The notes beneath the pieces are model-generated. The model searched no databases, was not told the DNA's origin, and was given only the letters and a program-made list of their open reading frames with translations. Made by a program: the position numbers and the translations under genes. From Macrostomum lignano (Eukaryota), in assembly GCA_002269645.1 (NCBI GenBank), contig NIVC01004952.1, forward strand, positions 1-30,379: 30,379 nt of DNA. The letters are read 5' to 3'. This document shows, in pieces, positions 9,223 through 30,130 of the stretch; position 1 is the stretch's first letter, and each line of letters opens with the position of its first letter.

Positions 9223-9251
9223 AGTTGACGAGTGAAAGTCACTTGTCACGT

Positions 9252-9257
9252 AATAAA
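9252..9257 (+). promoter_or_regulatory. Polyadenylation signal of the serine racemase gene (a second AATAAA overlaps the stop codon, 9218-9223)
   Basis: AATAAA 30 nt after the TAA stop. Confidence 0.5.
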
Positions 9258-9876: not shown

Positions 9877-9882
9877 TTTATT
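9877..9882 (-). promoter_or_regulatory. Polyadenylation signal of the SLC5 gene
   Basis: TTTATT on the + strand, 60 nt past the TAG at 9942-9944. Confidence 0.5.
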
Positions 9883-9941
9883 TGATAGCTACTGTTGGAG
9901 ACACGACGCTTGTACAGTGCGGTTTGAGCGGTTGGGACCCG

Positions 9942-12900
9942 CTAGGCGTAGAAGCCCCAGACGAACAGGCAGACGGTGACGATAATGAAGGCGTTGATGT
10001 CGACAACTCGCTTCATCTTAGGGTCCTCGTCCAGCGATACAGCCTCCTTCTCCAAGCGCTTGAGCTCTTCGGGATCGATGTGAGCGGCGGGGTCCTCCAC
10101 TTCGTCCTCGATGCCGCAGACCCACTTGCCGGCGCGCACGTACCAGGGCGGGGGCGCTGCGGGGGTTCGGGTGGCGGCCAGTGAGGGTTCGAGAGGGCCT
10201 ACTGAAGAGTAGCAAGCGAAGAATTTAAAGCGGATCTCTTAGTGTGTGCAAAAATCTTAGTGTGTGCGCTGATAGTTTTTATCGAACTTCGAAAGTGTGC
10301 TCGGGAAAGTCCAGATGACGAAGAGTGAAGACTCAGAAACCGATCCTGGCCTGTCGCATGTAGGCGCTCAGAGATGTAGCTCGTAATTGAGCGAAATCTG
10401 ATTGAAAACTGTGACATCTTCTTGCGTGCTCTTTTAAAGAAACCAGCAAACAAGGGAACGATTTGAATTTAGCTGTAAATCAGGGATCGGCAAACTTCTG
10501 CCCGCCAAGCCTTTCTGCGCTCGTGTGCAGGCCCTCGGATTCCTTGACCCCACATTAGCCACCCGGCCGCTCAAGTTTGGTGTCCCTCTCTATTCTCTCT
10601 TCTCTCCCACGTTCTCTCCGCTCTCTCCTCTCTCCTCTCCTCTCTCCCCTCCTCTCTCCTTCCTCTCTCCTTCTTCTCTCCTCTCCTCTCTTCTCTCCTC
10701 TCTCCCCTCCTCTCTCCTTCCTCTCTCCTTCTTCTCTCCTCTCCTCTCTCCTCTCCTCTCTCCCCTCCTCTTTCCTTCCTCTCTCCTTCCTCTCTCCCCT
10801 CCTCTCCCCCCTCTCTGCCCTCCTCTCTCCTTTCCTCTCTCTCCTCTCTCCTCTACTCTCTCCTTCCTCTCTCCCCTCCTCTCTACTTCCTCTCTTCCCT
10901 CCTCTCCCCCCCTCTCTGCCCTCCTCTCTCCTTTCTTCTCTCCCTTCCTCTCTCCTTTCCTCTCTCCTTTCCTCTCTCTCCTCTCTCCTCTCCTCTCTCC
11001 TTCCTCTCTCCCCTCCTCTCTACTTCCTCTCTCCCCTCCTCTCTCCTTTCCTCCCTCCCCTCCTCTCCCCTCCTCTCTGCCCTCCTCTCTCCTTTCCTCT
11101 CTCCCTTCCTCTCTCCTTTTCACTCTCCCCTCCTCTCTCCTTTCCTCTCTCCCCTCCTCTCTCCTTTCCTTTCTACTCCCCTCTCTCCTCTCCTCTCTCC
11201 CCTATTCTCTCTTCTCTCCCATGTTCTTTTCTATCTTCTCTCTCATATTATTTCCTTTCTTCTCTTCCATCTTCCAAGTTCTTTTTTATTTTCTCTCCCA
11301 TATTCTTTTCTCTCTCCTCTCCTCTCCTCTCCTCTCCTCTCCTCTCTTTCCTTTCTTCTCTTTCTTCTCTCCTATTCCTTATCTCCTCTCCTCTCTTCTC
11401 TTTTCTATTCATCTCCTCTCCCCCTCCTCTTGCCCGCAGTCATGCGAAGATTCTCCACCTGCCCGGGAGATAAAGAGGTTGCCAGCCCCTGGTGTCAATA
11501 TTCACGCCTCTACATCCTGTAAAATTCTTCCAACACGCAATCAAAGCCATGACTGCACATTCGGGAGCACAATGACCAGGAGATTATACGGCTGCACAAA
11601 TATGAATGATGTTACGTGAGCAATCGATAGCAGGCTTCCAATTGAGTTCAAAGCAAATTTCCCGAAGAAAAGCAGAGTTGAGAAATCCGTCACGGCCATC
11701 CTCACCAGTCGCAGCAAATTCAACGTCGCCAGCCGTGCCCGGCTGCTCCTCCTTCTGTAGCGACTTCTTCGAGCCATAGAAGCCCTGATTGTCCTTGCCG
11801 TTGTTGTCGGGCGATTTGTCGATGTCGGCCTCCTCCGCCTCGCCGCGGCATGCGCACCTGACCTCATCCTCGGGCATGTCCACCCGCTCCAGCTCCGAGT
11901 AGCGGTCCCAGAAGGTCAGGCGGTGCAGCTGCAGTGAGCAGGTATCAAAGATAGTTCGAGTGATACTACAGACCTTCCTAGAGCTCAAAGTTTCTCTAAA
12001 GTTTTGTTCACGGATTCTTTTTATTAGAGGCAGGGGCTGTGTGCCCCCTGACATTGTCCCACAACCGGCGAGAGGCATTACTGCTCATTCCGCCGACTTT
12101 CCTGAGCAGGCACGCAAGCGCGCGGGTAAGTATACAGTCATACGCACAGGCACACTCTCACACTGGAGTGTACAGTACAGTGGCCCTAACTTTATTTATC
12201 GTAAGGCATGTACACTTCACCGTGCCTTGGGGTTGGCCCTCAAGGGCGTTAATTGCAAGATCAGGGCCAAGCTGAGATTCCAATTTAGCCCCAAATTAAT
12301 GCGACTGCACTTGGAATCGAGCCTGGGCCGCTGGCACACCAGAGCGCCGCACGAGTCCACTGGGCTGCAGCTCCCGTTTTGCTCACTGAGTATTGAAGGT
12401 TGCCGGCGGCAAAACCTGATTTGCAGTTTCGCTCGATCTAGTCTTTAATAGTACTTATCGACATGTACTTTATTCGGAAAATTTTCCATGATATTGAAGT
12501 GTCCTCACTGACATTGCTTCTTGCAACCTGCCATTCCCACTGGCACCTGCCTGTGCTACTCACGTGAACATCCGGGATCGGCTCGGTGAGCAGCGACACC
12601 ACAACGATGACAATCAGGCTGATGACGAACAGCAGAATGCCGAAGTGCAGATAGTGCATCTTGCCGATCACGTCAGGCAGCGTGCTCTTATAGGCCTCGT
12701 GGCAGGAGAATTTTTCATAGGAGTATTCCACGATGAAGCGGATCATGCCGACCACGAAGCCAACGATCAGGCCCCAGAATGCGCCCTGTGGTGGGGAGCA
12801 GCCCCGAACGTGCGACAATGAAACTCAAGAGCCGTCCGTTACATTGAAACTCGGAATTTGAGTGTTTCATGAGGACAAAACTATTTCCTCAAAGTTACAG

Positions 12901-15900
12901 GTCTCATTCCCCTCCCCCACCTCTTATTCCCCTCCCCACCTCTTATTCCCTTCCCCCATCTGTTATTCCCTTCCCCCACCTGTTATTCCCCCCCACCTCT
13001 TATTCCCCTCCCCCACCTCTTATTCAGTTCCCCCACCTGTTATTCCCCTCCCCCACCTATTATTCCCCTCCCCCACCTCTTAATTCCCCTCCCCCACCTC
13101 TTATTCCCCTCCTCCCCTCCACTTCTTATTCTCCTCCTCCACTTCTTATTCCCCTCCCCCACCTCTTAATTCCCCTCCCCCACCTCTTAATTCCCCTCCT
13201 CCACCTCTTATTCCCCTCCTCCAGCTCTCATTACACCCCCACGTCTTATTCCCCTCCTCCCCTCCACTTCTTATTCTCCTCTTCCACTTATTCCCCTCCC
13301 CCACCTCTTATTCTCCTCCTCTTCCCCTCATCTCCATTTCTCTTTTCCTTCTCTTCTCCGTTTAAAAACAGAGCAAGCCGCACCTTCTCGTTGCAGCGTT
13401 TCCACAGGACGGCGGCCATGTAAACTGCGCAGACCGGCGGCGACAGGTAGCTGGTCACAGCCTGGATGTAGTGGAAGAGCTCCGCGCCAGACTTCACAAT
13501 TGGTATCCAGGCGACTCCGACAGCGACCATGCCCAGGACAAAGACTCTGCAATACCAGTCATTATATGTTTGCGGCGAGATTCGATTTCGTAAGCAACCT
13601 GAAAGCTGGCACTCAAACCACTGGCACTCACCGCCCAACGATCATGAGTTCCATGTCCGGCGCGTGGCTGCGGATTCGCTTCCAGATGTCGATGGTGAAA
13701 ATGGTCGAGGCCGAGTTGAAGATCGAGGTCAGCGAGGACACCAGAGATGAGATCATGACGGCCATCATGAGGCCCCGCGGTCCGTCGCCGAGGAGTTGCA
13801 GCACGAGCGTCGGGTAGGCCAGGTCGGTGCAGCCGCTCTCCTTGTCGCACACGTCCTTGCAGATCGCAGGGTCCGAGCAGCCGACGGTGTCTGAGGAGCG
13901 TGACGCGAGAACATTAGCCAGCAGCTGGAAGGGAGCTCACACCCAGCAGCTCACAATCCAGCAGTTCACAATCCGGCAGCTCACAACCCAGCAGCTCACA
14001 ACCCAGCAGCTTACAATCCGGCAGCTCACAATCTAGCAGCTCACAATCCAGCAGCTCACAATCTAGCAGCTCACAATCCAGCAGCTCACAATCTAGCAGC
14101 TCACAACCCAGCAGCTCACAATCCAGCAGCTCACAATCTAGCAGCTCACAATCTAGCAGCTCACAATCTAGCAGCTCACAATCTAGCAGCTCACAATCTA
14201 GCAGCTCACAATCTAGCAGCTCACAATCTAGCAGCTCACAATCTAGCAGCTCACTCACCGGGAAACAGGACTCGGGAGATCATGCCGGGGAACACCAGCA
14301 GCCACATGGGTAGCAGCTTCAGGTAGCCCGCCAGCAGAGTGCCCGCCTTCGCGTAGGTGAAGTTCTTCGCCGCAAGAGCGCGCTGGACAATCACCTGTGC
14401 ATGGTGTAGGTGGGGCTGGCTGTGACGACTCTCAATATTGCCACAGCAGTCTCGCGAGCAGCGGGAGGTCACAGTTTCTTTTCACGTTGTGTGATGTGAA
14501 ATCCCCATTTTCCTCTTTATCCCTGGCGCTTTTACTAGTTGACTTATGGGATCCAGTTAAACTTTTCAAAGGCTTTAGCAACCGGTGTCCCAGCCGTACC
14601 TGGTCGCTGCACCAGTACCAGATGGCGTTCACGGCGAGTCCCATAGTGGCGCCGAGCCAGGGAAGCTGGTCATCGTCGATCGGCTTCATCAAGTTCATGG
14701 AGGTTTCTGGTATGACACCGCAGGAGGTGTTCGAAGTGAGGATGTCCTTGGCCAGGCGGATGGGAAACAAGCGGACCATTTCTTCGTATCCGCCTACCTC
14801 GATAAAGCCTGGATGAATGAAAGAGAATTAATGAATTCCCGTTCAAGTGTAACACTACTTTCATATTGCAACGGATTGGCTAAATTGTGTAAATTGACTC
14901 GGGTTCAAATTAACTGCTTCAGTATGAACATTGACTCCGACCCTCATTGGCTGGCTTGATATGCACATTGACTCCGGCCCTCATTGGCTGGCTTGATATG
15001 CACATTGACTCCGGCCCTCATTGGCTGGCTTGATATGCACATTGACTCCGGCCCTCATTGGCTGGCTTGATATGCACATTGACTCCGGCCCTCATTGGCT
15101 GGCTTGATATGCACATTGACTCCGGCCCTCATTGGCTGGCTTGATATGCACATTGACTCCGGCCCTCATTGGCTGGCTTGATATGCACATTGACTCCGGC
15201 CCTCATTGGCTGGCTTGATATGCACATTGACTCCGGCCCTCATTGGCTGGCTTAACTACGCTTAATTTGAAGCCACAGTTCTCAGTCACTCTATGTACCG
15301 GTAGCAAACAATGTTCAAAGTGTGATGAGCATAACTTGGCTTTAAGTATTTATACGGCGTTTTTGATATATTTCAGAATGCTTCTGATAGTCACATTTGC
15401 ACTTTAGCCTAATTAATAAGCTCTGACCTGAGTATTTCTAAATAGTAAGATATCTGACACTATTGAGGGATTCAGGCTATGCTTTTAACCAAAAAGCAAA
15501 TATGGTTGACTTGAATAACTTATAATGCATGCATAAGTCAATTTTTTATGATTAATGAAATCGCGCATGCCTAAGGCTGTTTGTCGCGCCTGAGCAGTTC
15601 GGTGGGTGGGCAAGAAAGCTGCATAAATCTGCATGGCAATGCGATAATGCTCAGCTCACGGTGAAACTGCCTGCAAATGCTAATTTATGGTGAATAAAGC
15701 CCGATCTCACCTGCAATCATGAGCCAGAACGCGCCAATCACCATGATGATGGTCTGGATGAAGTCGGTCCAGATCACGGCCGTAAGCCCGCCCAGAATGG
15801 TGAACAGCGCCGCAATGCCCAGCAGGATGATGACGGCCACGTACAGGTCGAACTGCAGCGACTGCTCGATGAAGACGGCGCCAGCGTACAGGTCGGCCTG

Positions 15901-18900
15901 AAGAGGCGGTGGTGGAGCAGCGACTCATCAGCCTATTGCTCTCCTCGATGGCTCTAACTAGTGACCAGTTTGGTGAGTCAGTTTGTATGGTGGCATAAAT
16001 CAGGTAAATCAAATCAATGATGCACTGAGTCTACAGCAGCCCCAATTTCTCTTCCTTAGACACGCTTACACTCCGGGCTTTGGTGGCAGGTCTTGCTTGA
16101 ATCGAGCTGCAAACCTAAGGCCCAAATAGCAGCCCCAATTTCTCTTCCTTAGACACGCTTACACTCCAGGCTTTGGTGGCAGGTCTTGCTTGAATCGAGC
16201 TGCAAACCTAAGGCCCAGCAGCCCCAATTTCTCTTCCTTAGACACGCTTACACTCCAGGCTTTGGTGGCAGGTCTTGCTTGAATCGAGCTGCAAACCTAA
16301 GGCCCAGCAGCCCCAATTTCTCTTCCTTAGACACGCTTACACTCCGGGCTTTGGTGGCAGGTCTTGCTTGAATCGAGCTGCAAACCTAAGGCCCAAATAG
16401 CAGCCCCAATTTCTCTTCCTTAGACACGCTTACACTCCAGGCTTTGGTGGCAGGTCTTGCTTGAATCGAGCTGCAAACCTAAGGCCCAGCAGCCCAATTT
16501 CTCTTTCTTAGACACGCTTACACTCCAGGCTTTGGTGGCAGGTCTTGCTTGAATCGAGCTGCAAACCTAAGGCCCAGCAGCCCCAATTTCTCTTCCTTAG
16601 ACACGCTTACACTCCGGGCTTTGGTGGCAGGTCTTGCTTGAATCGAGCTGCAAACCTAAGGCCCAGCAGCCCCAATTTCTCTTCCTTAGACACGCTTACA
16701 CTCCGGGCTTTGGTGGCAGGTCTTGCTTGAATCGAGCTGCAAACCTAAGGCCCAGCAGCCCCAATTTCTCTTCCTTAGACACGCTTACACTCCGGGCTTT
16801 GGTGGCAGGTCTTGCTTGAATCGAGCTGCAAACCTAAGGCCCAAATTATTGTGAGCAGACGCGGATTTGAACTGCGGCAAAGCTGATCAAGCCTTACAAT
16901 TCCCGTCCAACCCAGGGTTCGAACACCCCGCTCAGCAACTCTCTGAGCTACAAAATGAACTTGTCACCGTCAATGTCACCTTCTGTCTCATGTGCTGAGA
17001 TAGCATAGAGCACGCATTATCTTATCTGCCCTGCTCGAAAAGAGATTGTTTAGCACTGAGTTGATTAACCATGCAAACGAACACTGCTCGCTGAGCAATG
17101 CTTTGCAAATCAAGCTGCTTTCACTTTACAAGACAAGAGGCGGAGGACACACGCGGGCCTCCGTGCATAGCAAGCGGCATTCGTTGCTATGCATGCAAAG
17201 CATTGGCAGTTTATCAGTTATGCAGCTGTGGGTAGTTACATAAATCAGAATTAATTTCGAGTGCAGGCAACGGCCGAGAAAAGAAAGTCATGAGACTCAC
17301 TCTGTACCCGAAAGAATCTTATAAGGTTTAACAAACTGAAATTAATGGTTGCTTAGCAACCGCAGCACAGGGCCAACTGTCCGCCCCACGATAGCACAAG
17401 ATAAGCCACTCCCGCCCAATTGAATCCTTTGTACTTCTGTTGCTCACTGAGACTTTCGTGAAGATGTAGAGAATGAGGGTCAGGCAGGACAGGTAGATCC
17501 GGATCCGCTGGCCGCCGAACCGCTTTTTCAGGTACTCGGGCATCGTGAACACCTGGGGCATTGTGACGAGTAAAAATTATTTCGATTAGCTAAAACAAAC
17601 ATCGGCGATGGAAGAGGATTTTTTACGAACTGGAGGCATTGTTTGAGGGTGTTGAGAAAGCGTGGGGATTAGGAACTCTGGGAATTAGGGATAAGAAAAT
17701 GCAGGGATATTATTCGCAGCTGGGGACTTGAAAAGTTTGAGAATTTGGGGTAAATCTCTGCATTCTTCTGGCTAGGTGTCTATTCTGTGGTTTCACGTGA
17801 AGCATCGAAGAAATGAACTAAAAAATTCAAACAAGGCTGACCCCGGAGGAGATGTACACCGGGACAAAGACCCAGCCGAGCAGAACCAAGACCAGCATTG
17901 CGCTGAACTCGAAAACGGCAATGCCGATGCCTCCGGCCGCGCCCGAGCCGGCCAGCCCGATGAAGTGGCCGGAGCCGATGTTGCTGGCGAACAGGGAGGC
18001 GCCCACCTGCGGAGAAGACGCACAGGTGTGTCCATGTGAGACACAGGCGTGTCTGTGTGAGACAGGTGTGTCTGTGTGAGACAGGTGTGTCCGTGTGAGA
18101 CAGGTGTGTCCGTGTGAGACAGGTGTGTCCGTGTGAGACAGGTGTGTCCGTGTGAGACAGGTGTGTCCGTGTGAGACAGGTGTGTCCGTGTGAGACAGGC
18201 GTGTCCGTGTGAGACAGGTGTGTCTGTGTGAGACAGGTGTGTCCGTGTGAGACAGGCGTGTCTGTATGAGACAGGCGTGTCTGTGTGAGACAGGTGTGTC
18301 AGTGTGAGACAGGTGTGTCAGTGTGGGACAGGTGTGTCAGTGTGAGACACAGGTGTGTCCGTGTCAGGACACAGGTGTGTCTATGCTAGTCAATTTCTCT
18401 AGAGTAGGTAAGTTCTCAGGCTCAATCACTCATCACTTTTTTTAACGGTCGACAAACATTAGGCAGCGCCGAAGTGCCTGATGTGCCAAATGATGGGGAC
18501 GCCCTGCGCCACGCAATCTGCGCACTTTTAGCTCAATTGAGCGCTGCAGTGCTGGTGGAGCACTCGAACAGGAGGCCGCGACTACAAATTTAGACTGGCT
18601 TTGTGCTCAGCTGGTTTCGCTAATTTCACCTACAGCTTTTCTCGCTAATTTTGTCGGCTCAGTGTTGATTTTAATACTTTCTTATGCAAAAACTGGCTTT
18701 ACTTGTGCTTTGGGAGCTAAAAACCATGAAATCCTAATTCAAACTGGCCTGGTGGCCTAAACGCAGACGTACCTGCTGGTCTTGCTGCCTGTTCTCAGTC
18801 TGTCTCCTTCCGGTGTCTCCCTTTCCGACTGCCTCCCCTCTAAGACTGTCTTCCCCTCCGACTGTCTTCCTTTCCGACTGTCTCCCCCTCTCCGACTGCG

Positions 18901-19296
18901 TCTCACTCCGACTCTCACAGAGACTCTCACAGTGTCTCACAGACAGACGAGTGCAGGAGCAGCATGCAGGTGAGGTGCATTAGAGTTAGAGTCGACCCCA
19001 GGCGGCAACTCACGGGAATCCAGTGCATGGAACGGCCAGCCAAAAAGTAGCCACCGACGCTTCCACGGTTGCGGCAGGAGGACTGCGGGATGGGCGGCGG
19101 GGTGCGAGCCGCGGACTTACATGTAGATGGAACTTCGAGTGTATTTCTGCAGTACATGCATATGCAGTCACTTGGTACTGAATGTGAAGACACAGACACT
19201 GCACTCTCTTACCCATAGGCCCACTGCAATGACGGCGGAGAAGAAAAGAACCACAACAATAATGTCGATCACGCCGAGACTTCCAACGACCGTCAT
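9942..19296 (-). CDS. SLC5 sodium/glucose (SGLT1-like) cotransporter, 692 aa; exons 19213-19296, 19014-19082, 17842-18006, 17448-17552, 15711-15897, 14600-14808, 14259-14394, 13632-13890, 13384-13546, 12564-12785, 11706-11928, 9942-10198
   Basis: Twelve exons join in phase through GT-AG introns (2079 nt). SSS-family motifs: [110 protein letters not shown], and a C-terminal TM helix. The exon 11 donor is the least certain junction. Orthology within SLC5A1/2/9/10/11 cannot be assigned by eye. Confidence 0.95.
10481..11491. mobile_element. Non-autonomous hAT (Charlie-like ends) element in the last SLC5 intron, filled by a CT-rich tract
   Basis: Left end CAGGGATCGGCAAACT; right end reverse complement CAGGGGCTGGCAACCT (12/16). 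Flanks CTGTAAAT (10473-10480) and GTGTCAAT (11492-11499) match 6/8. Confidence 0.65.
10584..11430. repeat. Low-complexity polypyrimidine (CTCTCTCCT-type) tract
   Basis: Almost purely C/T on the + strand for ~850 bp. Confidence 0.95.
12906..13330. repeat. ~20-bp minisatellite (TCCCCTCCCCCACCTCTTAT) in SLC5 intron 9
   Basis: Directly visible; G-rich on the transcribed (-) strand. Confidence 0.92.
13935..14254. repeat. 15-bp minisatellite (- strand GTGAGCTGCTAGATT, ~21 copies) abutting the SLC5 intron 7 donor
   Basis: Directly visible; starts 4 nt into the intron. Confidence 0.95.
14929..15253. repeat. 37-bp minisatellite (CATTGACTCCGGCCCTCATTGGCTGGCTTGATATGCA), ~9 near-identical copies, SLC5 intron 5
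   Basis: Directly visible; period 37 (14929, 14966, ...). Confidence 0.95.
16034..16846. repeat. 89-bp (occasionally 94-bp) tandem repeat, 9 copies, SLC5 intron 4
   Basis: CAGCAGCCCCAATTTCTC...CTAAGGCC units; identical ORFs at 16545 and 16634 confirm the 89-bp period. Confidence 0.95.
18021..18382. repeat. 19-bp minisatellite (GTGTGAGACAGGTGTGTCC), ~19 copies, ending ~15 nt from the SLC5 exon 3 acceptor
   Basis: Directly visible. Confidence 0.93.
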
Positions 19297-19396
19297 TTTT
19301 GCAAGAAAAAAATCGTCTCGACTGCAGCAGTTCGCTGGGGCTTCACACGCGTGTATAAAATTGCAGCGCCAACCCGCACGGCGAAAAGCAGACTGG

Positions 19397-19410
19397 AGTT
19401 TTATAAAACT
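19397..19410 (-). promoter_or_regulatory. Candidate TATA box (TATAAAA on the - strand) inside the perfect palindrome AGTTTTATAAAACT, ~100 nt upstream of the SLC5 ATG
   Basis: Position and sequence only; no TSS data. Confidence 0.3.
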
Positions 19411-19983
19411 TTGAGCCCCGAGCAAAAAATTTTCTAACATTTTAAAATGCTTGATAATACAAAATTAAATTAATAAATTAATATTGGCTTCCAATAATAG
19501 GCTAAAAACTTTTAACCTTTTCGTTTCTTTAATTCTGTAAATTTGTTAATATCTTCACCACACCGGAGCAAAAAGTAGCGCTCTGATCAGCTAGCTCTCG
19601 CGTACTACACTGGCCCCCGCTATCTACCTGCAAATACGGTTTAGAAACCACTCGCCAGCAGGGTCTGCTGCAGTGTTCGAAACTCTTTCTAAACCGAAGT
19701 CATTTTGCAGTCATTTGCAGCTGGTGTGCTGCATCATCACACCTGCGAAAACTGATAATGCAGCCTTGGGTTGAATTGAATGTTTAGAAAATTTCTAAAT
19801 TTTTAGATTCGAGCATATTTATAAAAAGCGACCGAGAAAAAACTTCCTAAGGCTCAAATTTATCATCAATAAGTGATCGGCATCTTCTACAGGTACAGAC
19901 AGGTACGGGTCCACAGGTACATAATTCTGAAAATATTCGAAAACAATCTGCCCAGGAGCGTTGCCATGGGAACATGCCATAAA

Positions 19984-20612
19984 TGCACATGCACATGTAG
20001 AATGTGTATCGCATGTTTCACATGCACATGTAGAATGTGTATCGCATATTTCACATGCACATGTAGAATGTGTATCGCATGTTTCACATGCACATGTAGA
20101 ATGTGTATCGCATGTTTCACATGCACATGTAGAATGTGTATCGGATGTTTCACATGCACATGTAGAATGTGTATCGCGTGTTTCACATGCACATGTAGAA
20201 TGTGTATCGGATGTTTCACATGCACATGTAGAATGTGTATCGCGTGTTTCACATGCACATGTAGAATGTGTATCGGATGTTTCACATGCACATGTAGAAT
20301 GTGTATCGCATGTTTCACATGCACATGTAGAATGTGTATCGGATGTTTCACATGCACATGTAGAATGTGTATCGCGTGTTTCACATGCACATGTAGAATG
20401 TGTATCGCGTGTTTCACATGCACATGTAGAATGTGTATCGGATGTTTCACATGCACATGTAGAATGTGTATCGCGTGTTTCACATGCACATGTAGAATGT
20501 GTATCGCGTGTTTCACATGCACATGTAGAATGTGTATCGGATGTTTCACATGCACATGTAGAATGTGTATCGCATGTTTCACATGCACATGTAGAATGTG
20601 TATCGCATGTTT
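19984..20612. repeat. 33-bp minisatellite (CACATGCACATGTAGAATGTGTATCGCATGTTT), 19 copies, intergenic
   Basis: Directly visible; variation is almost confined to CGCAT/CGGAT/CGCGT. Confidence 0.96.
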
Positions 20613-21241
20613 TACAGCGAGAGCCGCACGCGCTGATGGCTGTCATGTCGGTAGGAACCCGGCAGGCAGGATGAGAGAAGCCCCCAGGAGGGCTGGGCGT
20701 ACAATTTCTTACCCCATGCCAGCCAATCAGCGCGCGGAGGCACCCACCCCTGAGGTGGGCTCCGATTCTCAATGCACTGGCTTGACTTTCCCATCATCAG
20801 GCACGTCTAGTGTACACTCCATGCCTTTGAGGTTGGCCGCAGGCAAATTTCTGAGCACAAACCCCCGCCCCAAAATAAGGAATGGAACTCGGGGAGATCC
20901 AGGCCACACGTTTAATGATGCTTAACGGCTTCTTTTCACTAAATATTATATAATCTTACCCTTATTAATATTATGTTAGGAATTTCATGAGAAACAAATC
21001 AATCATGATGCTGAATGAATTGGATCTGTGAATTCAGTATATTTGAATCGGATTAAATTTATAAACACTGTCACCTGCACTTGAGTACACAGGAACTCCT
21101 AGCTTTGGTGTCGCATAAATACAGCCAGAGTCGCTTCGCTGGGATTGCAAAGCCGATGCCTAATAAACTCAATGAAAAGTCATCACAGTCGTTCATAAAG
21201 TTACTTTCTAAACATATCGGCAACTAAGCAGCTGCCGACCG

Positions 21242-24200
21242 CTACGCGCCTTGATCGGCCATCCGCTGCAGCCTGGTGGCAGCTGAGTCTGACGCCAAGG
21301 TGCCCTGCGCCACTCCCATAGTGCAGCGAAGGGCGCGACAGGCCAGCATCAACACGGCGCTGAACCTCGCATTGCTGCTGTCGTCTTCCTCGTCGTCGAC
21401 CACCAGCCGGCTGTCAATGAAGCCGCTTTCGTCGCCGTCCTCCAGCTGCAGCAGCTCCTGCTCAGTTTGGCAATTGCAAAATGTTTTGAGCTGCTGGCCG
21501 CGGCAGGCGGCGAAGCCGGCCTTGTCCTTGTGGCGCATCCGGCCGGTCAGCAGCTCCACGGCCAGGTCCAGCAGCTGCAGGAAATTGTTGGTCAGCAGCG
21601 CCCGGTCGTCCTGGCAGTCCGCCAGGCAGTCCGGCCACCAGATGATCGGCCGGCTGAAGACGTCCAGACGGATTGACTCGCAGGCCAGCAGCCGCGGTGA
21701 CCGCACCAGGCAAAGCCGCTGGCCGTGCAGGTGGCACAGGGCGCTCATGAGGCTGCCGAGCTGGCCAACCCGGACGGGCATGGACAGCCGCCTGGCCGAG
21801 GCGTCATCTGACAGGACGTCTGCCAGAGTGCACGCGTACACTGGCAGGAAGAGGTCCAGGGACAGCGCGCTGGAGTCCGGCTGCGACTCCAGCTTGGTGC
21901 CCATCAGACAGGCCAGGCTGGGGTGGCGCAGCTCCTGCAAACAATTCGGCGATTAAGAGATGGCGGCTTCCGTTAGTGAAAACAACATCTGGAGCTATAA
22001 AAGTGCACGCCAAAGCAAAAGTACACACTGAACCGCATTGCAAGCCTAGCATGCACGTCAAAACAGAAGTACACACTGATGTTACATCCGCATTGCAAGC
22101 CAAGTGCGCATGTCAAAACAGAAGTACACACTGAAGTTACATCCGCATTGCAAGCCAAGTGCGCATGTCAAAACAGAAGTACACACTGAAGTTACATCCG
22201 CATTGCAAGCCAAGTACGCATGTCAAAACAGAAGTACACACTGAAGTTACATCCGCATTGCAAGCCAAGTGCGCATGTCAAAACAGAAGTACACACTGAA
22301 GTTACATCCGCATTGCAAGCTAAGTACGCATGTCAAAGCAAAAGTACAATCTGAACTCAAGAAGAAACACGGAGCCCTGCACACCTGCAATCGCTCGATC
22401 ATGGCTTGTACATCACTGGCCGTGGAACCGTCGGGCTGAAGGCGGACAATCCAATGAACAACGCGACAGAAGTTGCCTCGGACCTCCACGATCGACGGGG
22501 AGACCAGCTGCGGCACTGAGGAGATTTCGTCAGCGTTGAAGCTGATGGCCGTCAGGCCTTTCAGCACTACCTGCGGCGGGCAGGTCTGCTGCGGCCCCAG
22601 GGCTTCATCGTCAGTCTCAGGCGGCTGCGGCTGGGGCTGCGGTGGCGAGTCGATGATTCCGGCGATTTCTGTGACTTTGGGACTCTGAGCTGGCTGATCT
22701 GGTGCGCCCTGCTGCACCTGCTGCTGCTCGAACTGCGATGGTTCGGGCGACTTTTATGGGTTATGAGGCGGCTCTTCATCCGGGACAACCCCAGGTCACA
22801 TGCAGGACAACCCCAGCTCACATCCGGGACAACCCCAGTTCACATCCGGGACAACCCCAGTTCACATCCAGGACAACCCCAGCTCACATCCGGGACAACC
22901 CCACACACATCGGCTCACCGGGACATCGCCAGCTGCAAAGTCCATCATCTGCATGTCGGCACCGTCGGAGAATTCAGCAAGGGGCTCCAGGCCTGTCAGA
23001 AGCTGTGGACAGGCCTGCCGCAGCGCGTGCACCGCATCGACAATCGGTGGCTCCTTCGCCATGATGACAGCCACGTCCCGCATAGTCGGCATCCGCATGC
23101 GCCATTTAAGGAAAAAGCGCTTCGAGAGCTCCATGCTGTTGCCTGTGTGATTGGGTTTGGAAGTCGCACTTTGTGCTGGATTTGGCACTGTGTTGGATTT
23201 GGCACTGTGCTGGATTTGGCACTCTGTTGGATTTAGCACTGTGTTGTATTTGGCACTGTGTTGGATTTGGCACTCTGTGTTGGATTTGGCACTCTGTGTT
23301 GGATTTGGCACTCTGTTGGATTTAGCACTGTGTTGTATTTGGCACTGTGTTGGATTTGGCACTCTGTGTTGGATTTGGTACTCTGTGTTGGATTTGGCAC
23401 TCTGTTGGATTTAGCACTCTAATGCTGAATTTGGCACTCTGTGTTGGATTTGGCACTCTAATGCTGAATTTGGCACTCTGTGTTGGATTTGGCACTCTGT
23501 GTTGGATTTGGCACTCTGTTGGATTTAGCACTGTGTTGTATTTGGCACTGTGTTGGATTTGACACTCTGTGTTGGATTTGGCACTCTGTGTTGGATTTGG
23601 CACTCTGTTGGATTTAGCACTCTAATGCTGAATTTGGCACTCTGTGTTGGATTTGGCACTCTAATGCTGAATTTGGCACTCTGTGTTGGATTTGGCACTC
23701 TGTGTTGGATTTGGCACTCTGTTGGATTTAGCACTGTGTTGTATTTGGCACTGTGTTGGATTTGGCACTCTGTGTTGGATTTGGCACTCTGTGTTGGATT
23801 TGGCACTCTGTTGGATTTAGCACTCTAATGCTGAATTTGGCACTCTGTGTTGGATTTGGCACTCTAATGCTGAATTTGGCACTCTGTGTTGGATTTGGCA
23901 CTCTGTGTTGGATTTAGCACTCTAATGCTGGATTTGGCACTCTGTGTTGGATTTAGCACTCTAATGCTGGATTTGGCACTCTAGATTTGGCACTCTGTGC
24001 TGGATTTAGCACTCTAATGCTGGATTTGGCACTCTAGATTTGGCACTCTGTGCTGGATTTAGAAATCTATGACATTTACATGTATAGGGGCTAATGCTAA
24101 GTTTAATTATATATAATTTTACAATGTGGTGTATCTCACAGCTGTAAATTAAGTATATGCAATTAAGCTAAGTGTTTCATATTTACTAAAAACACTTACC

Positions 24201-24359
24201 ACCTTTAGCTCGGATCATAAGAATATCATTTTGTGAGAATCCAACCCGAGATGCCACCTCTTCAAATGAGCCAGATAATGCCACAGCATTAACCAGCTGG
24301 AAGAACAGCTTTGGACTCACATTGCCCAGGTAGGTGTTGCTGATATCATCATTAGACAT
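21242..24359 (-). CDS. Death domain plus pseudokinase protein of IRAK/Pelle/Tube architecture, 474 aa; exons 24200-24359, 22919-23142, 22385-22732, 21242-21934
   Basis: Four exons join in phase (1, 0, 0) through GT-AG introns (1425 nt). The N-terminus TYLGNVSPKLFFQLVNAVALSGSFEEVASRVGFSQNDILMIRAKGGNSMELSKRFFLKWRMRMPTMRDVAVIMAKEPPIVDAVHAL fits a death-domain helix pattern. A Q/P-rich linker follows. Then SFNADEI, RGNFCRV, MIERLQELRHPSLACLMG, TLADVLS, LSMPVRV..SALCHLH and VELLTG match IRAK-type kinase subdomains in order, while the VAVK, HRD, DFG and APE motifs are absent. Confidence 0.8.
21998..22345. repeat. 55-bp tandem repeat, ~6 copies, intron 3 of the DD-pseudokinase gene
   Basis: GTACACACTG recurs at 22069, 22124 and onward (period 55). 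Confidence 0.92.
22776..22913. repeat. 22-bp minisatellite (- strand GTGAGCTGGGGTTGTCCCGGAT), ~6 copies, next to the intron 2 donor of the DD-pseudokinase gene
   Basis: Directly visible. Confidence 0.88.
23165..24062. repeat. Compound minisatellite of ~17-21-bp monomers (GGATTTGGCACTCTGTGTT) with a ~203-bp higher-order repeat, intron 1 of the DD-pseudokinase gene
   Basis: Directly visible; near-identical ORFs at 23322 and 23525 give the 203-bp period. Confidence 0.93.
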
Positions 24360-26287
24360 GTTATCAAAACTGCATTAGTCTATGGCTAAAAAATTGTAAT
24401 AAAGTTTGTTATAACAAAGTATGAATCTAGATGTTTTTATATAAGAATTAAATTTGTATAAATAATTAAAACTTTATATAAGTTTGTATTATTTAAAATG
24501 CTCAATTTCTAAATAAATAATTAAAATAACAACTTTCCATTTTAAATAATTAGTAATGTTCTAATTAATTAGAAATAAATATATAAATAAATTCAAATCT
24601 AGGATATCAGACTATATTAGACACCATTTTCATAAAATTTAAAACTTTATATTTGGCTTTATAGTTTTACCTATTATGAATAATAAAGTTTGGTAATTGT
24701 AAAGAAGTGCATATTTAATTGTTTTTTAACTTAAATGAACACCCAAGTCTCAAAGATCCAAAAGTACATAGCAACTTGATTGAAGAGACATAGGCACACT
24801 GCAAGGCAAAACACATAGCACACAGCAGCAACTCTTTGAGATGTACCCAGAAGAGTTCATGTGGCACAAGCTTCATCCCACCAAGCAATTTAGTTGGATT
24901 CTCTACTAGATCAGCCACTATTACCCATGGGCCACAACTACTGCTGCTATAACCTACTGAAAAGGTATCATTGTCTACTTGACAAGTTGTACTCTCTTTT
25001 TGAACAGTTTTGTGTCGTTAAATGTGTCTCCTATCACAATAAATATGCTTTGACATTCATTTAAATTTGCACTTCTATACAATTGCCTAAAGTTTCTATT
25101 CAAGTTAGCTAGTTTTTCATTTAATATTTATTGTAATCTACAAAACTATTGCATTGTTTAGCAAATCAATATAAATCATCCTATTAATATTAATTATTTA
25201 TTAATATTATTTTACAAAAGTTAGAAAGCCTGCATATTGCCAGCTGCCACAAGGCAATATTTCAGTTACCAGTCATTTTAATTTTTTTAATTATAAGTGA
25301 TCAATAGTCATTGCTATATGTTTGTCAATTCTTTCTATTCTTGACTTTCCTAGTTGTTTGCTGGATAGTTATAGCGACTTGCAACGATCATTATAGTTAA
25401 AATACTAAATAACATACTCACACGCGGTGAATGAAGTATTATTACTCCCTCTAAGTCTCTAACACTAATCAGGAAATTAGGGATGTGCTTTCCTAGAAAA
25501 AGTAAATTTCGAATTTTCATCTTTTCGTCAGGTCAGAACCAAAAAATATATATGTCTCATCTTTGACCTTTCAAAACTAATTAAACGTGTCTTAGTTCAT
25601 CAAGAAACTCCTATTTTAAAATGATAAAGCTTAATAAATGCGCCAGTTATTTCTGCATTTTCGGTTCCATTCTGAATTAAAATAAAAAGTAAATACATTT
25701 TACGATATGTCAAATCATTAAACAAACTTAACTTGCAGGAGTAAACATATTAGTGGCAATTGCCAGATTTCAAAAATTAGATATTCATTCCCTGTCAGTA
25801 CAAATATTTTCAGATAAGTTGTTAAAAAGAATTCGCGCAGTTTGATGTAGATCTGAACTTGGCCGCAAGACTACAAAAACTTCCTTACAAAACATGTATT
25901 TATAACTCCTCTCAGAAGCAAATTATTTCAGTCATTTTCCTTGTTTTATTTTTTTGCTGCAACGCTTGCAGGTCTCGCTGAAAGTTTTTAGATGAATTAT
26001 AAAAAATAAAATAAGTAGACTAAAAGAACACTTTTCTTGAGAGCGATGAACTAAAGTGAAAAATTCAAAAAGAAAACGAAGGAAAAACAATAAGTAGCCT
26101 TGAAATTTTAGAACTAATTAAATATGTACAAGGCTCCTTTGACTCACAGTGCAACATGGATAGATAGATATTTTCATTGATCACGGCGTAAAAACTCCCC
26201 AAGCCAAGCCGATACGCATGCATCCAGGGATCTCAAAGCTAACTCTAAGGGAATCGAGCACGGGGGCTGCGGGGTCAGTTCATCCGA

Positions 26288-29200
26288 TCAGAAGCTGCGA
26301 TCCGCCGAGCAGCCGCAGGAATTCACGAACGGGCGAACGGAGCCGGGCAGCCGATGCTCCTTCACGTTGCTAGCGATCCACTGCAGGCTGCGCTGCCAGC
26401 GCCGTTGCTGCTCCAGGCAGTCACCGAGGGTCCGCTCTAGCTCGGCCAGCTGTCCTGTTGCCCTGCTGGCCACCATCCGGCCTAACTGGCGCAGCAGGAA
26501 GTGCCTCGAGGCGCACACCGCGCAGGTGGACGAGGCAGTCGGCGACGGCTTTAGAGAGGCTTTGAAACCGCCGGGAGTAGAGTGCAGGAGGCAGAGCCGC
26601 TGGCACAAGCTGGTCTGCGTCACTGCCGGTGGCGGCTGATAATGCTGATGCTGATGATGCTGATGTTGGTGATGGTGATGATGCTGATGGTGCTGGCGAT
26701 GCTGATGATTACGTTCGCGATGCCGATTGCGATGCCGCTGTTGATGATGCTGGTTATCCTCCAGACCTCGGGCTAAACTGTGCTCTGCATCAAAATGAGC
26801 AATACCTGTAGAGAAGCTGCGGTTGTGGCGGTTAGGAGTTTTAATATACATGTGTACGAGCTTTCATGGTGTATTTATAAAAACAAACGTGTGCCTTGAC
26901 CCGCTGCCGCTAGTACAAGTGCAAAGCTGCTGGTTACATGTAAAGTGTTGAAACAATGGGGGTAGCTTATAGCTTCTATCACATCACAGCAGCAGCTAGG
27001 TGGACTGGAGCCCAGCTTGCCTTGCAAATCACTCGCGGTGGCTGCCTGCCTCGAGAGGTTGCGAGGGCTACTAGTATATTTACACCCACTAAGACGTATA
27101 TGTACGTATTTGTAAGTTCCATTAGTCAGTATATGGTGCGGACCTGGCGGCGAACGCGCGAATTAATTCTCAGAGCTATCGACCCCAGAGCTTAAAATAA
27201 GCTCATTAGGGCTTGTTGATGCATAGTCAGTCTTCTGATGGCGACTCTTCAAGGGTTTGGAGGCGACTCTTGAAGAGTTTGGAGTGATTCTTAGACTTTG
27301 GAGGCGACACTCGTGAGTTTGGAGGCGATTCTTGAAGAGTTTGGAGGCGATTCTTGAAGAGTTTGGAGGCGATTCTTGAAGAGTTTGGAGGCGATTCTTG
27401 AAGAGTTTGGAGGCGATTCTTGAAGAGTTTGGAGGCGATTCTTGAAGAGTTTGGAGGCGATTCTTGAAGAGTTTGGAGGCGATTCTTGAAGAGTCTGGAG
27501 GCGATTCTTGAAGAGTTTGAAGGCGATTCTTGAAGACTTTGGAGGCTTGCGGACCACGTAAAGATGATTCTTAAGAAGTTCAAGGGGCGCTTTTCATATG
27601 GTATAAAAATTAAGGATGGAAATTGCGCGGTTAATGCGTGCTTGTATAAACGGAAACGTGCGAAACTCAGGTGATCGTGTGCACTCAGCTAATATTCACA
27701 ATGCGCACCTGGACGTTTGCTTTGCTTGCGGCTGCTGCCGGTACGAGTTGCTGCCGTCTGTGTTCAGCGCCGGGACCACCGCGGCGGCCGCGGCGGGCTG
27801 CAGTTCCGGCTGGTCCACCTGAAGAGCGAACTCGACCGACTTCAGCGTGGAAGGCGTCGAGGCGGAGCAGCTTCGGCTTTGCCGGCGAGTCAGCCGGCGC
27901 TGCTGACGGCGCTGTCGGCTGCTGCGTCGGCGGCGGCGCTGACGGCGGGGCGGTGAAGGCTTCCGCGTAGATGTGCTGCTGGCGCTGCGGCGGGTGTCTG
28001 CGGTGGCTGGGTGGGTGAGAGTTCGCGGATGTCTGCAGATGTCACGGGTGAGAGTCCGGGTGTCTGTAGATGGGGTGGGTGAGAGTCCGGGTGTCTGTAG
28101 ATGGGGTGGGTGAGAGTCCGGGTGCTGTAGATGGGGTGGGTGAGAGTCCGGGTGTCTGTAGATGGGGTGGGTGAGAGTCCGGGTGTCTGTAGATGGGGTG
28201 GGTGAGAGTCCGGGTGTCTGTAGATGGGGTGGGTGAGAGTCCGGGTGTCTGTAGATGGGGTGGGTGAGAGTCCGGGTGTCTGTAGATGGGGTGGGTGAGA
28301 GTCCGGGTGTCTGTAGATGGGGTGGGTGAGAGTCCGGGTGTCTGTAGATGGGGTGGGTGAGAGTCCGGGTGTCTGTAGATGGGGTGGGTGAGAGTCCGGG
28401 TGTCTGTAGATGGGGTGGGTGAGAGTCCGGGTGTCTGTAGATGGGTGGGTGAGAGTCCGGGTGTCTGTAGATGGGGTGGGTGAGAGTCCGGGTGCTGTAG
28501 ATGGGGTGGGTGAGAGTCCGGGTGTCTGTAGATGGGTGGGTGAGAGTCCGGGTGTCTGTAGATGGGGTGGGTGAGAGTCCGGGTGTCTGTAGATGGGGTG
28601 GGTGAGAGTCCGGGTGTCTGTAGATGGGGTGGGTGAGAGTCCGGGTGTCTGTAGATGGGGTGGGTGAGAGTCCGGGTGTCTGTAGATGGGGTGGGTGAGA
28701 GTCCGGGTGCTGTAGATGGGTGGGTGAGAGTCCGGGTGTCTGTAGATGGGGTGGGTGAGAGTCCGGGTGTCTGTAGATGGAGTGGGTGAGAGTCCGGGTG
28801 TCTGTAGATGGGGTGGGTGAGAGTCCGGGTGTCTGTAGATGGGGTGGGTGAGAGTCCGGGTGTCTGTAGATGGGGTGGGTGAGAGTCCGGGTGTCTGTAG
28901 ATGGGGTGGGGTGAGAGTCCGGGTGCTGTAGATGGGGTGGGTGAGAGTCCGGGTGCCTGTAGATGGGGTGGGTGAGAGTCCGGGTGTCTGTAGATGGGTG
29001 GGTGAGAGTCCGGGTGTCTGTAGATGGGTGGGTGAGAGTCCGGGTGTCTGTAGATGGGGTGGGTGAGAGTCCGGTGTCTGTAGATGGGTGGGTGAGAGTC
29101 CGGGTGCCTGTAGATGGGTGGGTGAGAGTCCGGGTGTCTGTAGATGGGTGGGTGAGAGTCCGGGTGTCTGTAGATGGGGTGGGTGAGAGTCCGGGTGTCT

Positions 29201-30130
29201 GTAGATGGAGTGGGTGAGAGTCCGGGTGTCTGTAGATGGGGTGGGTGTGAGTCCGGGTGTCTGTAGATGGAGTGGGTGAGAGTCCGGGTGTCTGTAGATG
29301 GGGTGGGTGAGAGTCCGGGTGTCTGTAGATGGGAGTGGGTGTGAGTCCGGGTGTCTGTAGATGGAGTGGGTGAGAGTCCGGGTGTCTGTAGATGGGGTGG
29401 GTGTGAGTCCGGGTGTCTGTAGATGGAGTGGGTGAGTCCGGGTGCATGCAGATGGGGTGGGTGGCGAGACGGAGTGCCAGAAGACGAGTCCAACTCACTG
29501 TCCCTGTCGGAACTCACTGTCCCTGTCGGCAGCCCCGGTGAGCATCGGGCAGGTGAGCGCCTCTCCGCACAGCCTGAGTTGCTTCGCCAGCAGCGAGTCG
29601 ATGAGCAAGCCGCGCGCACCTGTCAGGAAAGAAGACTCGACGCCAGCCGTTCGGCCAGGAGAGCCCGGCATCGAGATGAGGCGGCCAGCTGCTGGCAATG
29701 AGGCGGAGTCTGCGCGTCCATCGCAGTGATGGTGTCCCGCTCGTGCTGCGGTCGGCGGGCGGCGCCGGCCTGCGCAGGCAAAACGGTCCACCAGACTCGG
29801 TAAGGCCTAAGGAGTCGGCGAGCGCGGAGCGCAGGAATTCGCTGAGCAGGTGGTCCCGAACTCGAACCGCAGAGTCCTGGCCAACAGCAGGCGGATCTGC
29901 CGCATGCCGCGATTCGCCAAGTCGCTGTCAAAGCCCTGGCCGGCGCTGTGGAAGTCGCAGTCCGCTTCCTCCTCGTCCTCGTTGCTGATGGAGGCCAGGA
30001 TGTCGGACAGCTCCGAGTCTGTCGCCGACAAGAGCGACTGCATGGTGCAGACGGGGGCGCAGGCGGAGTTTGGGGGGTACCGCAGCGAGGTTGGCGCGAG
30101 AAATGCCGGCGAAAGAAAGCGGCCGGCCAT
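26288..30130 (-). CDS. Unrecognised multi-exon gene; approximate exons 29499-30130 (three apparent 1-nt deletions), 27709-27997, 26288-26805; His/Gln tract and C-terminal predicted helix/coiled coil
   Basis: Three GC-rich blocks are bounded by GT/AG on the - strand. Coding-like segments include MQSLLSATDSELSDILASISNEDEEEADCDF..., HIYAEAFTAPPSAPPPTQQP..., HHQHHHHHQHQHHQHQH and RQLGRMVASRATGQLAELERTLGDCLEQQRRWQRSLQWIASNV. The exon 2 to 3 phase and the true start (30130 vs 30171) are unresolved; it could be a pseudogene. Confidence 0.6.
27236..27548. repeat. 22-bp minisatellite (GAAGAGTTTGGAGGCGATTCTT), ~11 clean copies plus degenerate ends
   Basis: Directly visible. Confidence 0.93.
28005..29465. 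repeat. 31-bp G-rich minisatellite (GTCTGTAGATGGGGTGGGTGAGAGTCCGGGT), ~46 copies, filling one intron
   Basis: Directly visible; units of 29-32 bp. Confidence 0.97.
29492..29529. repeat. Perfect 19-bp tandem duplication containing a splice donor (- strand CCGACAGGGACA|GTGAGTT x2)
   Basis: AACTCACTGTCCCTGTCGG at 29492-29510 and 29511-29529. Confidence 0.9.

What the first reader, a model, noticed from the sequence alone, without database searches (positions are those of the whole stretch)
21242..24359. Death-domain pseudokinase of IRAK/Pelle/Tube type with a collapsed activation segment
Seen: a 474-aa spliced ORF whose 53-codon first exon is missing from the ORF track. It has an N-terminal death-domain-like region and a kinase-like region lacking the beta3 lysine, HRD, DFG and APE. 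Only ~19 residues (WWPDCLADCQDDRALLTNN) stand where the DFG-to-alphaF stretch is about twice as long, and an acidic insert (EDGDESGFIDSRLVVDDEEDD) sits in the C-lobe. Established: DD plus kinase defines the IRAK family in Toll/IL-1R Myddosome signalling; IRAK2/3 are pseudokinases and Drosophila Tube has lost its kinase domain. Inference: a far more eroded intermediate between IRAK4 and Tube, acting as scaffold or decoy. If the host is a flatworm, a lineage reported to lack canonical TLR/NF-kB components, it would point to a non-canonical death-domain immune or apoptotic complex.
Basis: partly seen in the sequence, partly recalled or inferred. Interest (0 to 1): 0.75.

Follow-up and report, generated by a model that had tools for sequence, protein, structure and literature searches.

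The report
Flatworm death-domain gene, possible kinase relic
An unannotated four-exon gene of the flatworm Macrostomum lignano encodes a protein with a fairly well supported N-terminal death domain and a C-terminal part that only weakly resembles a dead IRAK/Pelle-type kinase, so it is a modestly interesting orphan adaptor candidate, not a proven pseudokinase.

Summary
The 474-aa spliced ORF is real in the sequence: four minus-strand exons, all GT..AG, with the model frame best by codon usage in every exon.

The protein is an orphan. An exhaustive phmmer search of 1.84 billion representatives found no homologue and no self-hit, so I infer the gene is absent from the public annotation.

The death domain is reasonably supported. 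Pfam Death is the only family hit (E 0.04-0.1, below threshold). It appears only when exon 1 is joined to exon 2. A low-confidence AlphaFold model of aa 1-108 gives 15 death domains as its 15 best PDB matches.

The kinase claim is weak:
- Pfam, PDB phmmer, IRAK4 profiles and a generic giant-virus kinase profile give nothing.
- Two IRAK/RLK-weighted profiles align aa 237-315 to kinase alphaC-alphaE in one register (p about 1e-4 and 0.008).
- G-loop, catalytic loop, DFG, APE and alphaF are not detectable.

Expression and partners are untested.

The parts
24200..24359 (-). Exon 1: ATG at 24359, 53 codons + 1 base, donor G|GTAAGT. It encodes death-domain helices 1-3.
   Evidence: An in-frame stop lies 6 codons upstream of the ATG. 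GC3 is 0.43, yet the model frame is the best codon-usage frame.
23143..24199 (-). Intron 1 (1057 nt), mostly a 19-bp minisatellite (23166-24060, about 49 copies).
22919..23142 (-). Exon 2 (224 nt): acceptor cacacag|G, donor G|GTGAGC. It encodes death-domain helices 4-6 and contains the alternative start Met56 (ATG 23133).
22733..22918 (-). Intron 2 (186 nt), with a 22-bp x 6 tandem repeat.
22385..22732 (-). Exon 3 (348 nt): P/Q-rich linker (aa 129-182) and the region where a kinase N-lobe would lie (aa 183-244).
   Evidence: No kinase signal for the G-loop/beta3 block.
21935..22384 (-). Intron 3 (450 nt), with a 55-bp x 5.9 tandem repeat.
21242..21934 (-). Exon 4 (693 nt including the TAG at 21244-21242). 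GC3 is 0.87. It encodes aa 245-474.
23012..24314 (-). Death domain, aa 16-97, split by intron 1.
   Evidence: The Pfam Death hit covers aa 29-77, E 0.044-0.1, and appears only for the joined exons. The AF2 model has helices 16-29, 32-38, 43-51, 56-69, 74-82 and 85-97. The Foldseek top 15 are all death domains.
22571..22732 (-). Low-complexity P/Q-rich linker, aa 129-182.
   Evidence: 12 P and 12 Q in 53 residues.
21722..22408 (-). The only segment with a measurable kinase-like signal: aa 237-315, aligned to kinase subdomains III-VIa (alphaC to alphaE). It spans intron 3.
21584..21640 (-). aa 343-361, WWPDCLADCQDDRALLTNN: the short stretch between the putative catalytic-loop position and the putative alphaF (ELLTG).
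   Evidence: No statistical support for either register.
21380..21442 (-). Acidic insert, aa 409-429, EDGDESGFIDSRLVVDDEEDD.

Best explanation
An intact four-exon gene of Macrostomum lignano, apparently missing from the public annotation, encodes a 474-aa orphan protein. It has three parts: an N-terminal six-helix death domain (aa about 16-97), a P/Q-rich linker (aa 129-182), and a C-terminal region of about 290 aa.

The C-terminal region is most likely the catalytically dead, heavily eroded remnant of an IRAK/Pelle-type (TKL) kinase domain. Only the alphaC-to-alphaE core (aa 237-315) is still recognisable.

The protein would work without enzymatic activity. The death domain would join helical death-domain oligomers with other death-domain proteins. 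The C-terminal domain would serve as a docking or regulatory module. M. lignano has no TLRs, so the upstream partner would be something else, for example the death-domain-bearing TNF receptor reported in this species.

Shown here: the gene model, the coding signature, the species, the orphan status and the death-fold evidence. Inferred: kinase ancestry, expression, partners and function.
For: Gene and species:
- Canonical splice sites and an open 474-codon frame.
- Codon usage is best in the model frame for all four exons.
- The species and contig are identified.

Death domain:
- Pfam Death is the sole hit among 24,736 families, and only when exons 1 and 2 are joined in order.
- In the Foldseek search of the aa 1-108 model, ranks 1-15 are all death domains, probability up to 0.94.

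Kinase relic:
- HMM of 12 kinase domains against aa 175-474: 6.5 bits, HMMER P 2.3e-4, matched or exceeded by 4 of 30,000 global and 3 of 30,000 windowed shuffles.
- hhalign on the same alignment gives P 4.2e-4 and is collinear over aa 212-459.
- An independent profile of 12 real RLK-type domains from metagenome contigs recovers the same register, aa 237-315, at p = 0.0075.
- Real negative proteins score 2.9 bits or less.
- Domain order (death domain, linker, then a domain of about 270 aa) and overall size match IRAK/Pelle (established knowledge).
Against: - No Pfam kinase hit, even on fragments, and no PDB sequence hit.
- The mammalian IRAK4 HMM, Smith-Waterman (z = 0.08) and hhalign are all null.
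- A generic profile of 65 real giant-virus kinases gives no score.
- The G-loop/beta3 block and the HRD-to-end block are at chance, p about 0.3.
Corrected for all Pfam families, P = 1e-4 would not be significant.
- The full-length AF2 model is unusable, pLDDT 37.7.
- There is no homologue, no transcript evidence and no self-hit in public proteomes.
- The Death hit is below Pfam's gathering score, and the death-domain model has pLDDT 52.5 with Foldseek E of 0.13 or more.
Confidence: 0.45

Rival explanations
1. A death-domain adaptor whose C-terminal 290 aa is a lineage-specific domain, or a largely helical or disordered region, unrelated to kinases. The kinase resemblance would be a chance run of common hydrophobic motifs (L..L.HP.L..L.G, L.D.L, LH).
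For: - All standard searches are null for a kinase.
- Only about 80 of about 290 residues align.
- The signal drops from 1e-4 to 0.008 when the profile changes.
- The catalytic loop, DFG, APE and alphaF blocks are at chance.
- The hypothesis was generated from the same sequence patterns that the test then re-measures.
Against: - Three different TKL-weighted profiles give the same register.
- hhalign is collinear over the whole domain length.
- The order death domain, linker, then a domain of about 270 aa is what IRAK/Pelle proteins have.
Confidence: 0.35
2. The locus is not a working gene. It would be a recently decayed or never-expressed copy, or a prediction artefact, whose frame stays open because GC-rich DNA has few stop codons.
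For: - There is no self-hit among 1.84 billion representatives although the neighbouring M. lignano genes are present, so I infer it is not in the public annotation.
- There are no homologues anywhere.
- All catalytic motifs are lost.
- Exon 1 has atypical composition, GC3 0.43.
- All introns are filled with unstable minisatellites.
Against: - There are 474 codons without a stop across four exons with canonical splice sites.
- GC3 periodicity is strong and codon usage is best in the model frame for every exon.
- The death-domain profile match runs in register across the exon 1/2 junction.
Confidence: 0.15
3. Part of exon 4 (aa 299-385) derives from a retroelement integrase core.
For: The best database hit, P0001, aligns aa 299-385 to a stretch overlapping its rve domain.
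Against: - The score is only 10.2 bits per copy. The E-value of 1.8e-5 arises from five tandem copies in P0001.
- Pfam rve does not hit the protein.
- None of the integrases that should be abundant in the library is reported.
Confidence: 0.03

Closest known systems
IRAK4 / Drosophila Pelle (TKL group, IRAK family)
   Same: An N-terminal death domain, a Pro/Ser/Gln-rich linker and a C-terminal domain of kinase size. There is a weak alphaC-alphaE similarity with the L..L.H..L..L.G and LS...R......L..LH patterns.
   Different: - No detectable G-loop, beta3 Lys (Arg at the hhalign position), HRD (VRS), DFG or APE.
- The stretch between the catalytic-loop position and alphaF is about 20 residues shorter, and there is a 21-residue acidic insert.
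- No Pfam kinase hit.
- No measurable similarity to real IRAK4.
IRAK2 and IRAK3 (IRAK-M) pseudokinases
   Same: They are death-domain plus inactive-kinase scaffolds in Myddosome-type assemblies (established knowledge). This is the proposed mode of action.
   Different: IRAK2 still scores strongly as a kinase: a recalled IRAK2 sequence scored 156 bits against the same HMM that gives this protein 6.5 bits. IRAK3 was not scored here. This protein is far more degenerate than IRAK2.
Drosophila Tube
   Same: A death-domain adaptor of IRAK4 ancestry with no kinase activity (established knowledge).
   Different: Tube has short C-terminal repeats instead of a kinase-sized domain. No internal repeats are present here.
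Death-domain adaptors and receptors (FADD, TRADD, TNFR1, DR3, ankyrin, THOC1 death domains)
   Same: They are the best structural matches of the aa 1-108 model. M. lignano is reported to have a TNF receptor, and death domains are predicted in most platyhelminth TNF receptors (PMC7519573).
   Different: Their domain partners differ (DED, TNFR cysteine-rich domains, ZU5-UPA). The model is low-confidence, so the death-domain subtype cannot be assigned.

Membership tests
Death domain superfamily, DD subfamily (Pfam PF00531) | Sequence match to the Death profile at or above Pfam's gathering score. | tested here: inconclusive
   It is the only Pfam hit, E 0.044-0.1 and 13-14 bits against a cut-off of 22.6, with aa 29-77 matching profile positions 15-63 of 86. 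Real IRAK4 entries also carry no precomputed Death hit, so a sub-threshold score is common for this kind of death domain.
Death domain superfamily, DD subfamily (Pfam PF00531) | A six-helix antiparallel bundle of about 80-90 residues. | tested here: inconclusive
   The single-sequence AF2 model (pLDDT 52.5) has six helices in aa 16-97. Foldseek PDB ranks 1-15 are all death domains, with E 0.13-2.6, probability up to 0.94 and TM 0.36-0.55. This is suggestive, but the model confidence is low.
IRAK/Pelle family (TKL protein kinases) | A C-terminal protein-kinase fold detectable by Pkinase or PK_Tyr_Ser-Thr profiles. | tested here: not met
   There are no Pfam families for the C-terminal region or five sub-fragments at E up to 10. 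There are no PDB sequence hits. Only custom profiles run with filters off give a weak partial match over aa 237-315.
IRAK/Pelle family (TKL protein kinases) | Catalytic motifs: beta3 Lys, alphaC Glu, HRD, DFG and APE. | tested here: not met
   In the hhalign alignment the positions read R (IVRLQ), VRS, deleted, and WPD. The blocks containing them score at chance.
IRAK/Pelle family (TKL protein kinases) | Architecture: an N-terminal death domain, a linker, then a kinase-sized domain. | tested here: inconclusive
   The death domain (aa 16-97) and the P/Q linker (aa 129-182) are present. The identity of the third domain is unresolved.
IRAK/Pelle family (TKL protein kinases) | Phylogenetic grouping with IRAK1-4, Pelle or Tube-like kinases. 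| not testable with these tools
   Too little of the sequence is alignable. The IRAK-only sub-profile scores 2.0 bits and the mammalian IRAK4 profile gives nothing. No orthologues are available to build an alignment.
Pseudokinases of the IRAK2/IRAK3 type | The kinase fold is retained although catalytic residues are lost. | tested here: inconclusive
   The full-length AF2 model is unusable, pLDDT 37.7, and Foldseek on it is meaningless. There is only a partial sequence signal.
Tube | A death domain followed by short C-terminal repeats. | tested here: not met
   The best internal self-alignment score is 28, below the shuffle mean of 34.7.

The most novel reading that the evidence does not exclude
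Macrostomum lignano belongs to an early-branching flatworm lineage without TLRs. It may keep a vestigial IRAK-family protein, with an intact death domain and a kinase domain eroded beyond routine detection. This protein would have been rewired into a TLR-independent death-domain signalling complex, for example downstream of the death-domain-bearing TNF receptor. That would make it the first IRAK-family relic documented in Platyhelminthes and an extreme end-point of pseudokinase decay.
Probability: 0.2. Interest if true: 0.6.

Novelty: new variant of a known kind. Interest (0 to 1): 0.4.

Why it matters
Flatworms are reported to lack TLRs, and parasitic flatworms are reported to lack NF-kB and the IRAK family. 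How they wire innate immune and death signalling is therefore open.

A death-domain protein that is invisible to annotation pipelines and to ordinary homology search would show two things. First, death-fold adaptors in this phylum are under-counted. Second, if the kinase ancestry holds, pathway loss can leave behind repurposed scaffolds.

Practically, the gene is a concrete target for RNAi and in situ hybridisation in a tractable regeneration model. If the kinase resemblance is chance, it is simply one more orphan death-domain protein.

Tried and rejected
Searches for homologues, all null:
- The search for homologous proteins with the full protein found no hit at E up to 1.
- The exhaustive phmmer search of representatives found two hits, both artefacts. 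P0001 is a fivefold tandem retroelement protein scoring 10 bits per copy in its rve domain. P0002 is a low-complexity repeat.
- PDB phmmer with the full protein, the N-terminal part, the C-terminal part and the aa 229-321 block found only a flagellin at E 0.24-0.37, which is noise.

Kinase tests, all null:
- Mammalian IRAK4 HMM.
- Smith-Waterman: kinase z = 0.08, death domain z = 1.85.
- hhalign against IRAK4: probability 0.14%.
- A generic kinase profile from 65 real giant-virus kinases gave no score.

Structure:
- The full-length single-sequence AF2 model had pLDDT 37.7, and its Foldseek hits were meaningless.

Attempts to reach a second copy or check the annotation:
- The exon-4 ORF and a neighbouring ORF are not on record.
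- Locus L001 ends about 2 kb short of the gene.
- No paralogue lies next to the second serine racemase paralogue.

Other:
- Rfam found nothing in the window.
- No sandbox copy of the Pfam HMMs exists.
- I did not feed AlphaFold an IRAK4-seeded alignment, because that would be circular.
- I dropped my earlier idea that the 33-bp minisatellite is part of the symporter CDS. The symporter's N-terminal exon is at about 19296-19440.
Full report
**Observation**

On the minus strand, four exons join through canonical GT..AG sites into a 1425-nt ORF of 474 codons. The exons are 24359-24200, 23142-22919, 22732-22385 and 21934-21242.

As a mechanical ORF it is 57 aa, so a 60-aa cut-off hides it.
- An in-frame stop lies six codons upstream of the ATG.
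- All three introns consist largely of minisatellites.

**Is it coding?**

- GC by codon position is strongly periodic in exons 2-4. GC3 is 0.73, 0.72 and 0.87, against GC2 of 0.41-0.45. Exon 1 is atypical, with GC3 of 0.43.
- I trained a codon-usage log-odds on the neighbouring serine racemase gene. It is highest in the model frame for each of the four exons.
- For exon 4 the sense frame scores +0.44 with no stops. The 226-aa antisense ORF scores -0.26.
- The sequence therefore behaves like a gene, or a very recently dead one.

**Where it comes from**

- The concatenated serine racemase exons of the window (7063-9219, plus strand) are 100% identical to a Macrostomum lignano protein, BOX15_Mlig013346g2.
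- The window is the whole 30,379-bp contig NIVC01004952.1 of assembly GCA_002269645.1. A copy about 99% identical lies on NIVC01000716.1.
- Downstream on the same strand lies a sodium:solute symporter gene. Its N-terminal exon is at about 19.3-19.4 kb, roughly 1.8 kb from the stop codon of this gene.

**Orphan status**

- The word-indexed search found nothing at E up to 1.
- The exhaustive phmmer search over 1.84 billion cluster representatives returned two artefacts and no self-hit.
- The neighbouring M. lignano proteins are in that collection. I therefore infer that this gene is not in the public annotation and has no recognisable homologue in any sampled proteome.
- I could not reach the second genomic copy.

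**Death domain**

- The full-length protein hits no Pfam family.
- N-terminal fragments hit exactly one of 24,736 families, PF00531 Death. E is 0.044-0.1 at 13-14 bits, below the 22.6-bit cut-off. Residues 29-77 align to profile positions 15-63.
- That stretch crosses the exon 1/2 junction at aa 53/54. Exon 1 alone, exon 2 alone and the two pieces in swapped order all give no hit.
- Real IRAK4 entries carry no precomputed Death hit either, so a sub-threshold score is not unusual.
- A single-sequence AlphaFold model of aa 1-108 has low confidence: pLDDT 52.5, rising to 64-75 for aa 31-70. It shows six helices in aa 16-97.
- Foldseek of that model against 350,542 PDB chains puts death domains at ranks 1-15: THOC1, ankyrin, TNFR1, DR3, PIDD/RAIDD, Fas/FADD and p75NTR/TRADD. 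E is 0.13-2.6 and probability reaches 0.94. Pelle/Tube is at rank 26.
- I put the death fold at about 85%. The subtype cannot be assigned.

**Kinase-like region: null results**

- Pfam on the C-terminal part and five sub-fragments.
- PDB phmmer.
- An HMM of 94 real mammalian IRAK4 sequences, where the real protein scored below about half of the shuffles.
- Smith-Waterman against the IRAK4 kinase domain, z = 0.08.
- hhalign against IRAK4, probability 0.14%.
- The full-length AlphaFold model, pLDDT 37.7, with meaningless Foldseek hits.

**Kinase-like region: the weak positive signal**

Pfam's speed filters hide anything weaker than about P = 1e-5, so I built profiles and ran them with filters off.

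That provenance is a weakness. As a check, the profile scores real IRAK4 at 29-109 bits and real negative proteins at 2.9 bits or less.
- It gives aa 175-474 a score of 6.5 bits, HMMER P 2.3e-4.
- That score is matched or exceeded by 4 of 30,000 global shuffles and 3 of 30,000 windowed shuffles.
- hhalign on the same alignment gives P 4.2e-4 and probability 34%. Its alignment is collinear over aa 212-459, but it is confident only for aa 232-262 and 278-318.
- Split into blocks, all the signal sits in alphaC-to-alphaE, at 12.3 bits. The G-loop/beta3 block and the HRD-to-end block are at chance, p about 0.3.

*Profile B.* This used 12 real RLK-type kinase domains taken from metagenome contigs. 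It recovers the same register, aa 237-315, but only at 0.9 bits, p = 0.0075.

*Profile C.* This used 65 real giant-virus kinases and gives no score at all.

*Sub-profiles.* These show no special affinity to IRAK: TKL 6.7 bits, IRAK-only 2.0, RLK-only 3.9, non-TKL 0.9.

*Assessment.* A reproducible but marginal similarity to the TKL-type alphaC-alphaE region exists. It would not survive correction for all Pfam families. It gains weight only because a death domain followed by a linker and a domain of about 270 residues is the IRAK/Pelle architecture. I put kinase ancestry at about 45%.

**Catalytic motifs and the activation segment**

- At the hhalign positions the beta3 Lys is Arg, HRD is VRS, and DFG/APE are absent.
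- The span between the catalytic-loop position and the ELLTG helix is about 20 residues shorter than usual.
- There are no internal repeats of the Tube kind.

**Mechanism**

The best-supported reading is a non-enzymatic death-domain adaptor. The death domain would join helical death-domain oligomers, and the C-terminal domain would act as a docking module. This follows from established knowledge of death-domain assemblies and of IRAK2, IRAK3 and Tube. It is inference here.

- TLRs are absent from the M. lignano genome (PMC8609888).
- TLR, NF-kB, IRAK and TRAF6 are reported absent from helminths (PMC4484250), and TKL/IRAK is absent from schistosome kinomes (PMC4669435). A review nonetheless cites IRAK and MyD88 transcripts in Schmidtea (PMC6043800).
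- M. lignano has a TNF receptor and several TNF ligands, and death domains are predicted in most platyhelminth TNF receptors (PMC7519573). That offers an alternative upstream partner.

**Rivals**

- The C-terminal part is unrelated to kinases (0.35).
- The locus is unexpressed or decaying (0.15).
- Part of exon 4 is an integrase fragment (0.03). This rests on a chance hit inflated by tandem copies.

**Verdict**

- The finding is an orphan flatworm death-domain gene, apparently missing from the public annotation, with a possible and extremely eroded IRAK-type relic.
- I rate it a new variant of a known kind, of moderate interest.
- The decisive data are transcripts across the three junctions, the second copy and congeneric orthologues for selection tests, and alignment-based fold prediction. 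None of these is obtainable with the present tools.

Noticed in passing
window 19986-20616; 22033-22355; 22777-22911; 23166-24060: Dense minisatellites: 33 bp x 19, 55 bp x 5.9, 22 bp x 6, and 19 bp x 49 with 203/406-bp higher-order structure. They fill all three introns of the gene and the spacer to the next gene, and they create many long spurious ORFs on both strands.
   Followed up: partly
window 1-3000 and 24100-26000, against exons at 7-9 kb and 21-23 kb: Composition alternates sharply between AT-rich blocks (GC 0.28-0.32) and GC-rich exons (GC3 up to 0.87). Exon 1 of the death-domain gene sits at such a boundary and has GC3 of only 0.43.
   Followed up: partly
window 7063-9219 (+): A four-exon serine racemase gene, 100% identical to the M. 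lignano protein BOX15_Mlig013346g2. This identified the species and the contig.
   Followed up: yes
window 9942 to about 19440 (-): A sodium:solute symporter (SSF/SLC5) gene. It is annotated as 718 aa here and 678 aa on the 99%-identical contig. Its N-terminal exon ([16 protein letters not shown]...) is at about 19296-19440, roughly 1.8 kb downstream of the death-domain gene's stop on the same strand.
   Followed up: partly
L001 (NIVC01000716.1 217390-239550, reversed) against window 1-18381: The window has a second copy about 98-99% identical on a 462.6-kb contig (haplotype or recent duplicate). The fetched locus ends about 2 kb before the expected second copy of the death-domain gene. A 359-aa Pkinase gene lies at L001 1-323, outside the window.
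   Followed up: partly
window 27696-29619 (-): Long degenerate proline/histidine/threonine-rich tandem repeats give 525-600-aa mechanical ORFs. They are probably not genes.
   Followed up: no
window about 24380-24392 (-): A pyrimidine-rich ttttttag acceptor-like site lies about 25 nt upstream of the ATG at 24359. It could be a 5'-UTR splice or spliced-leader acceptor.
   Followed up: no
protein aa 299-385 (window 21512-21772): An ungapped 87-residue resemblance to the integrase-core region of a retroelement protein (P0001), including LDVFSRPII against LDIFTKFVI. It scores only 10 bits per copy and I judged it to be chance.
   Followed up: yes
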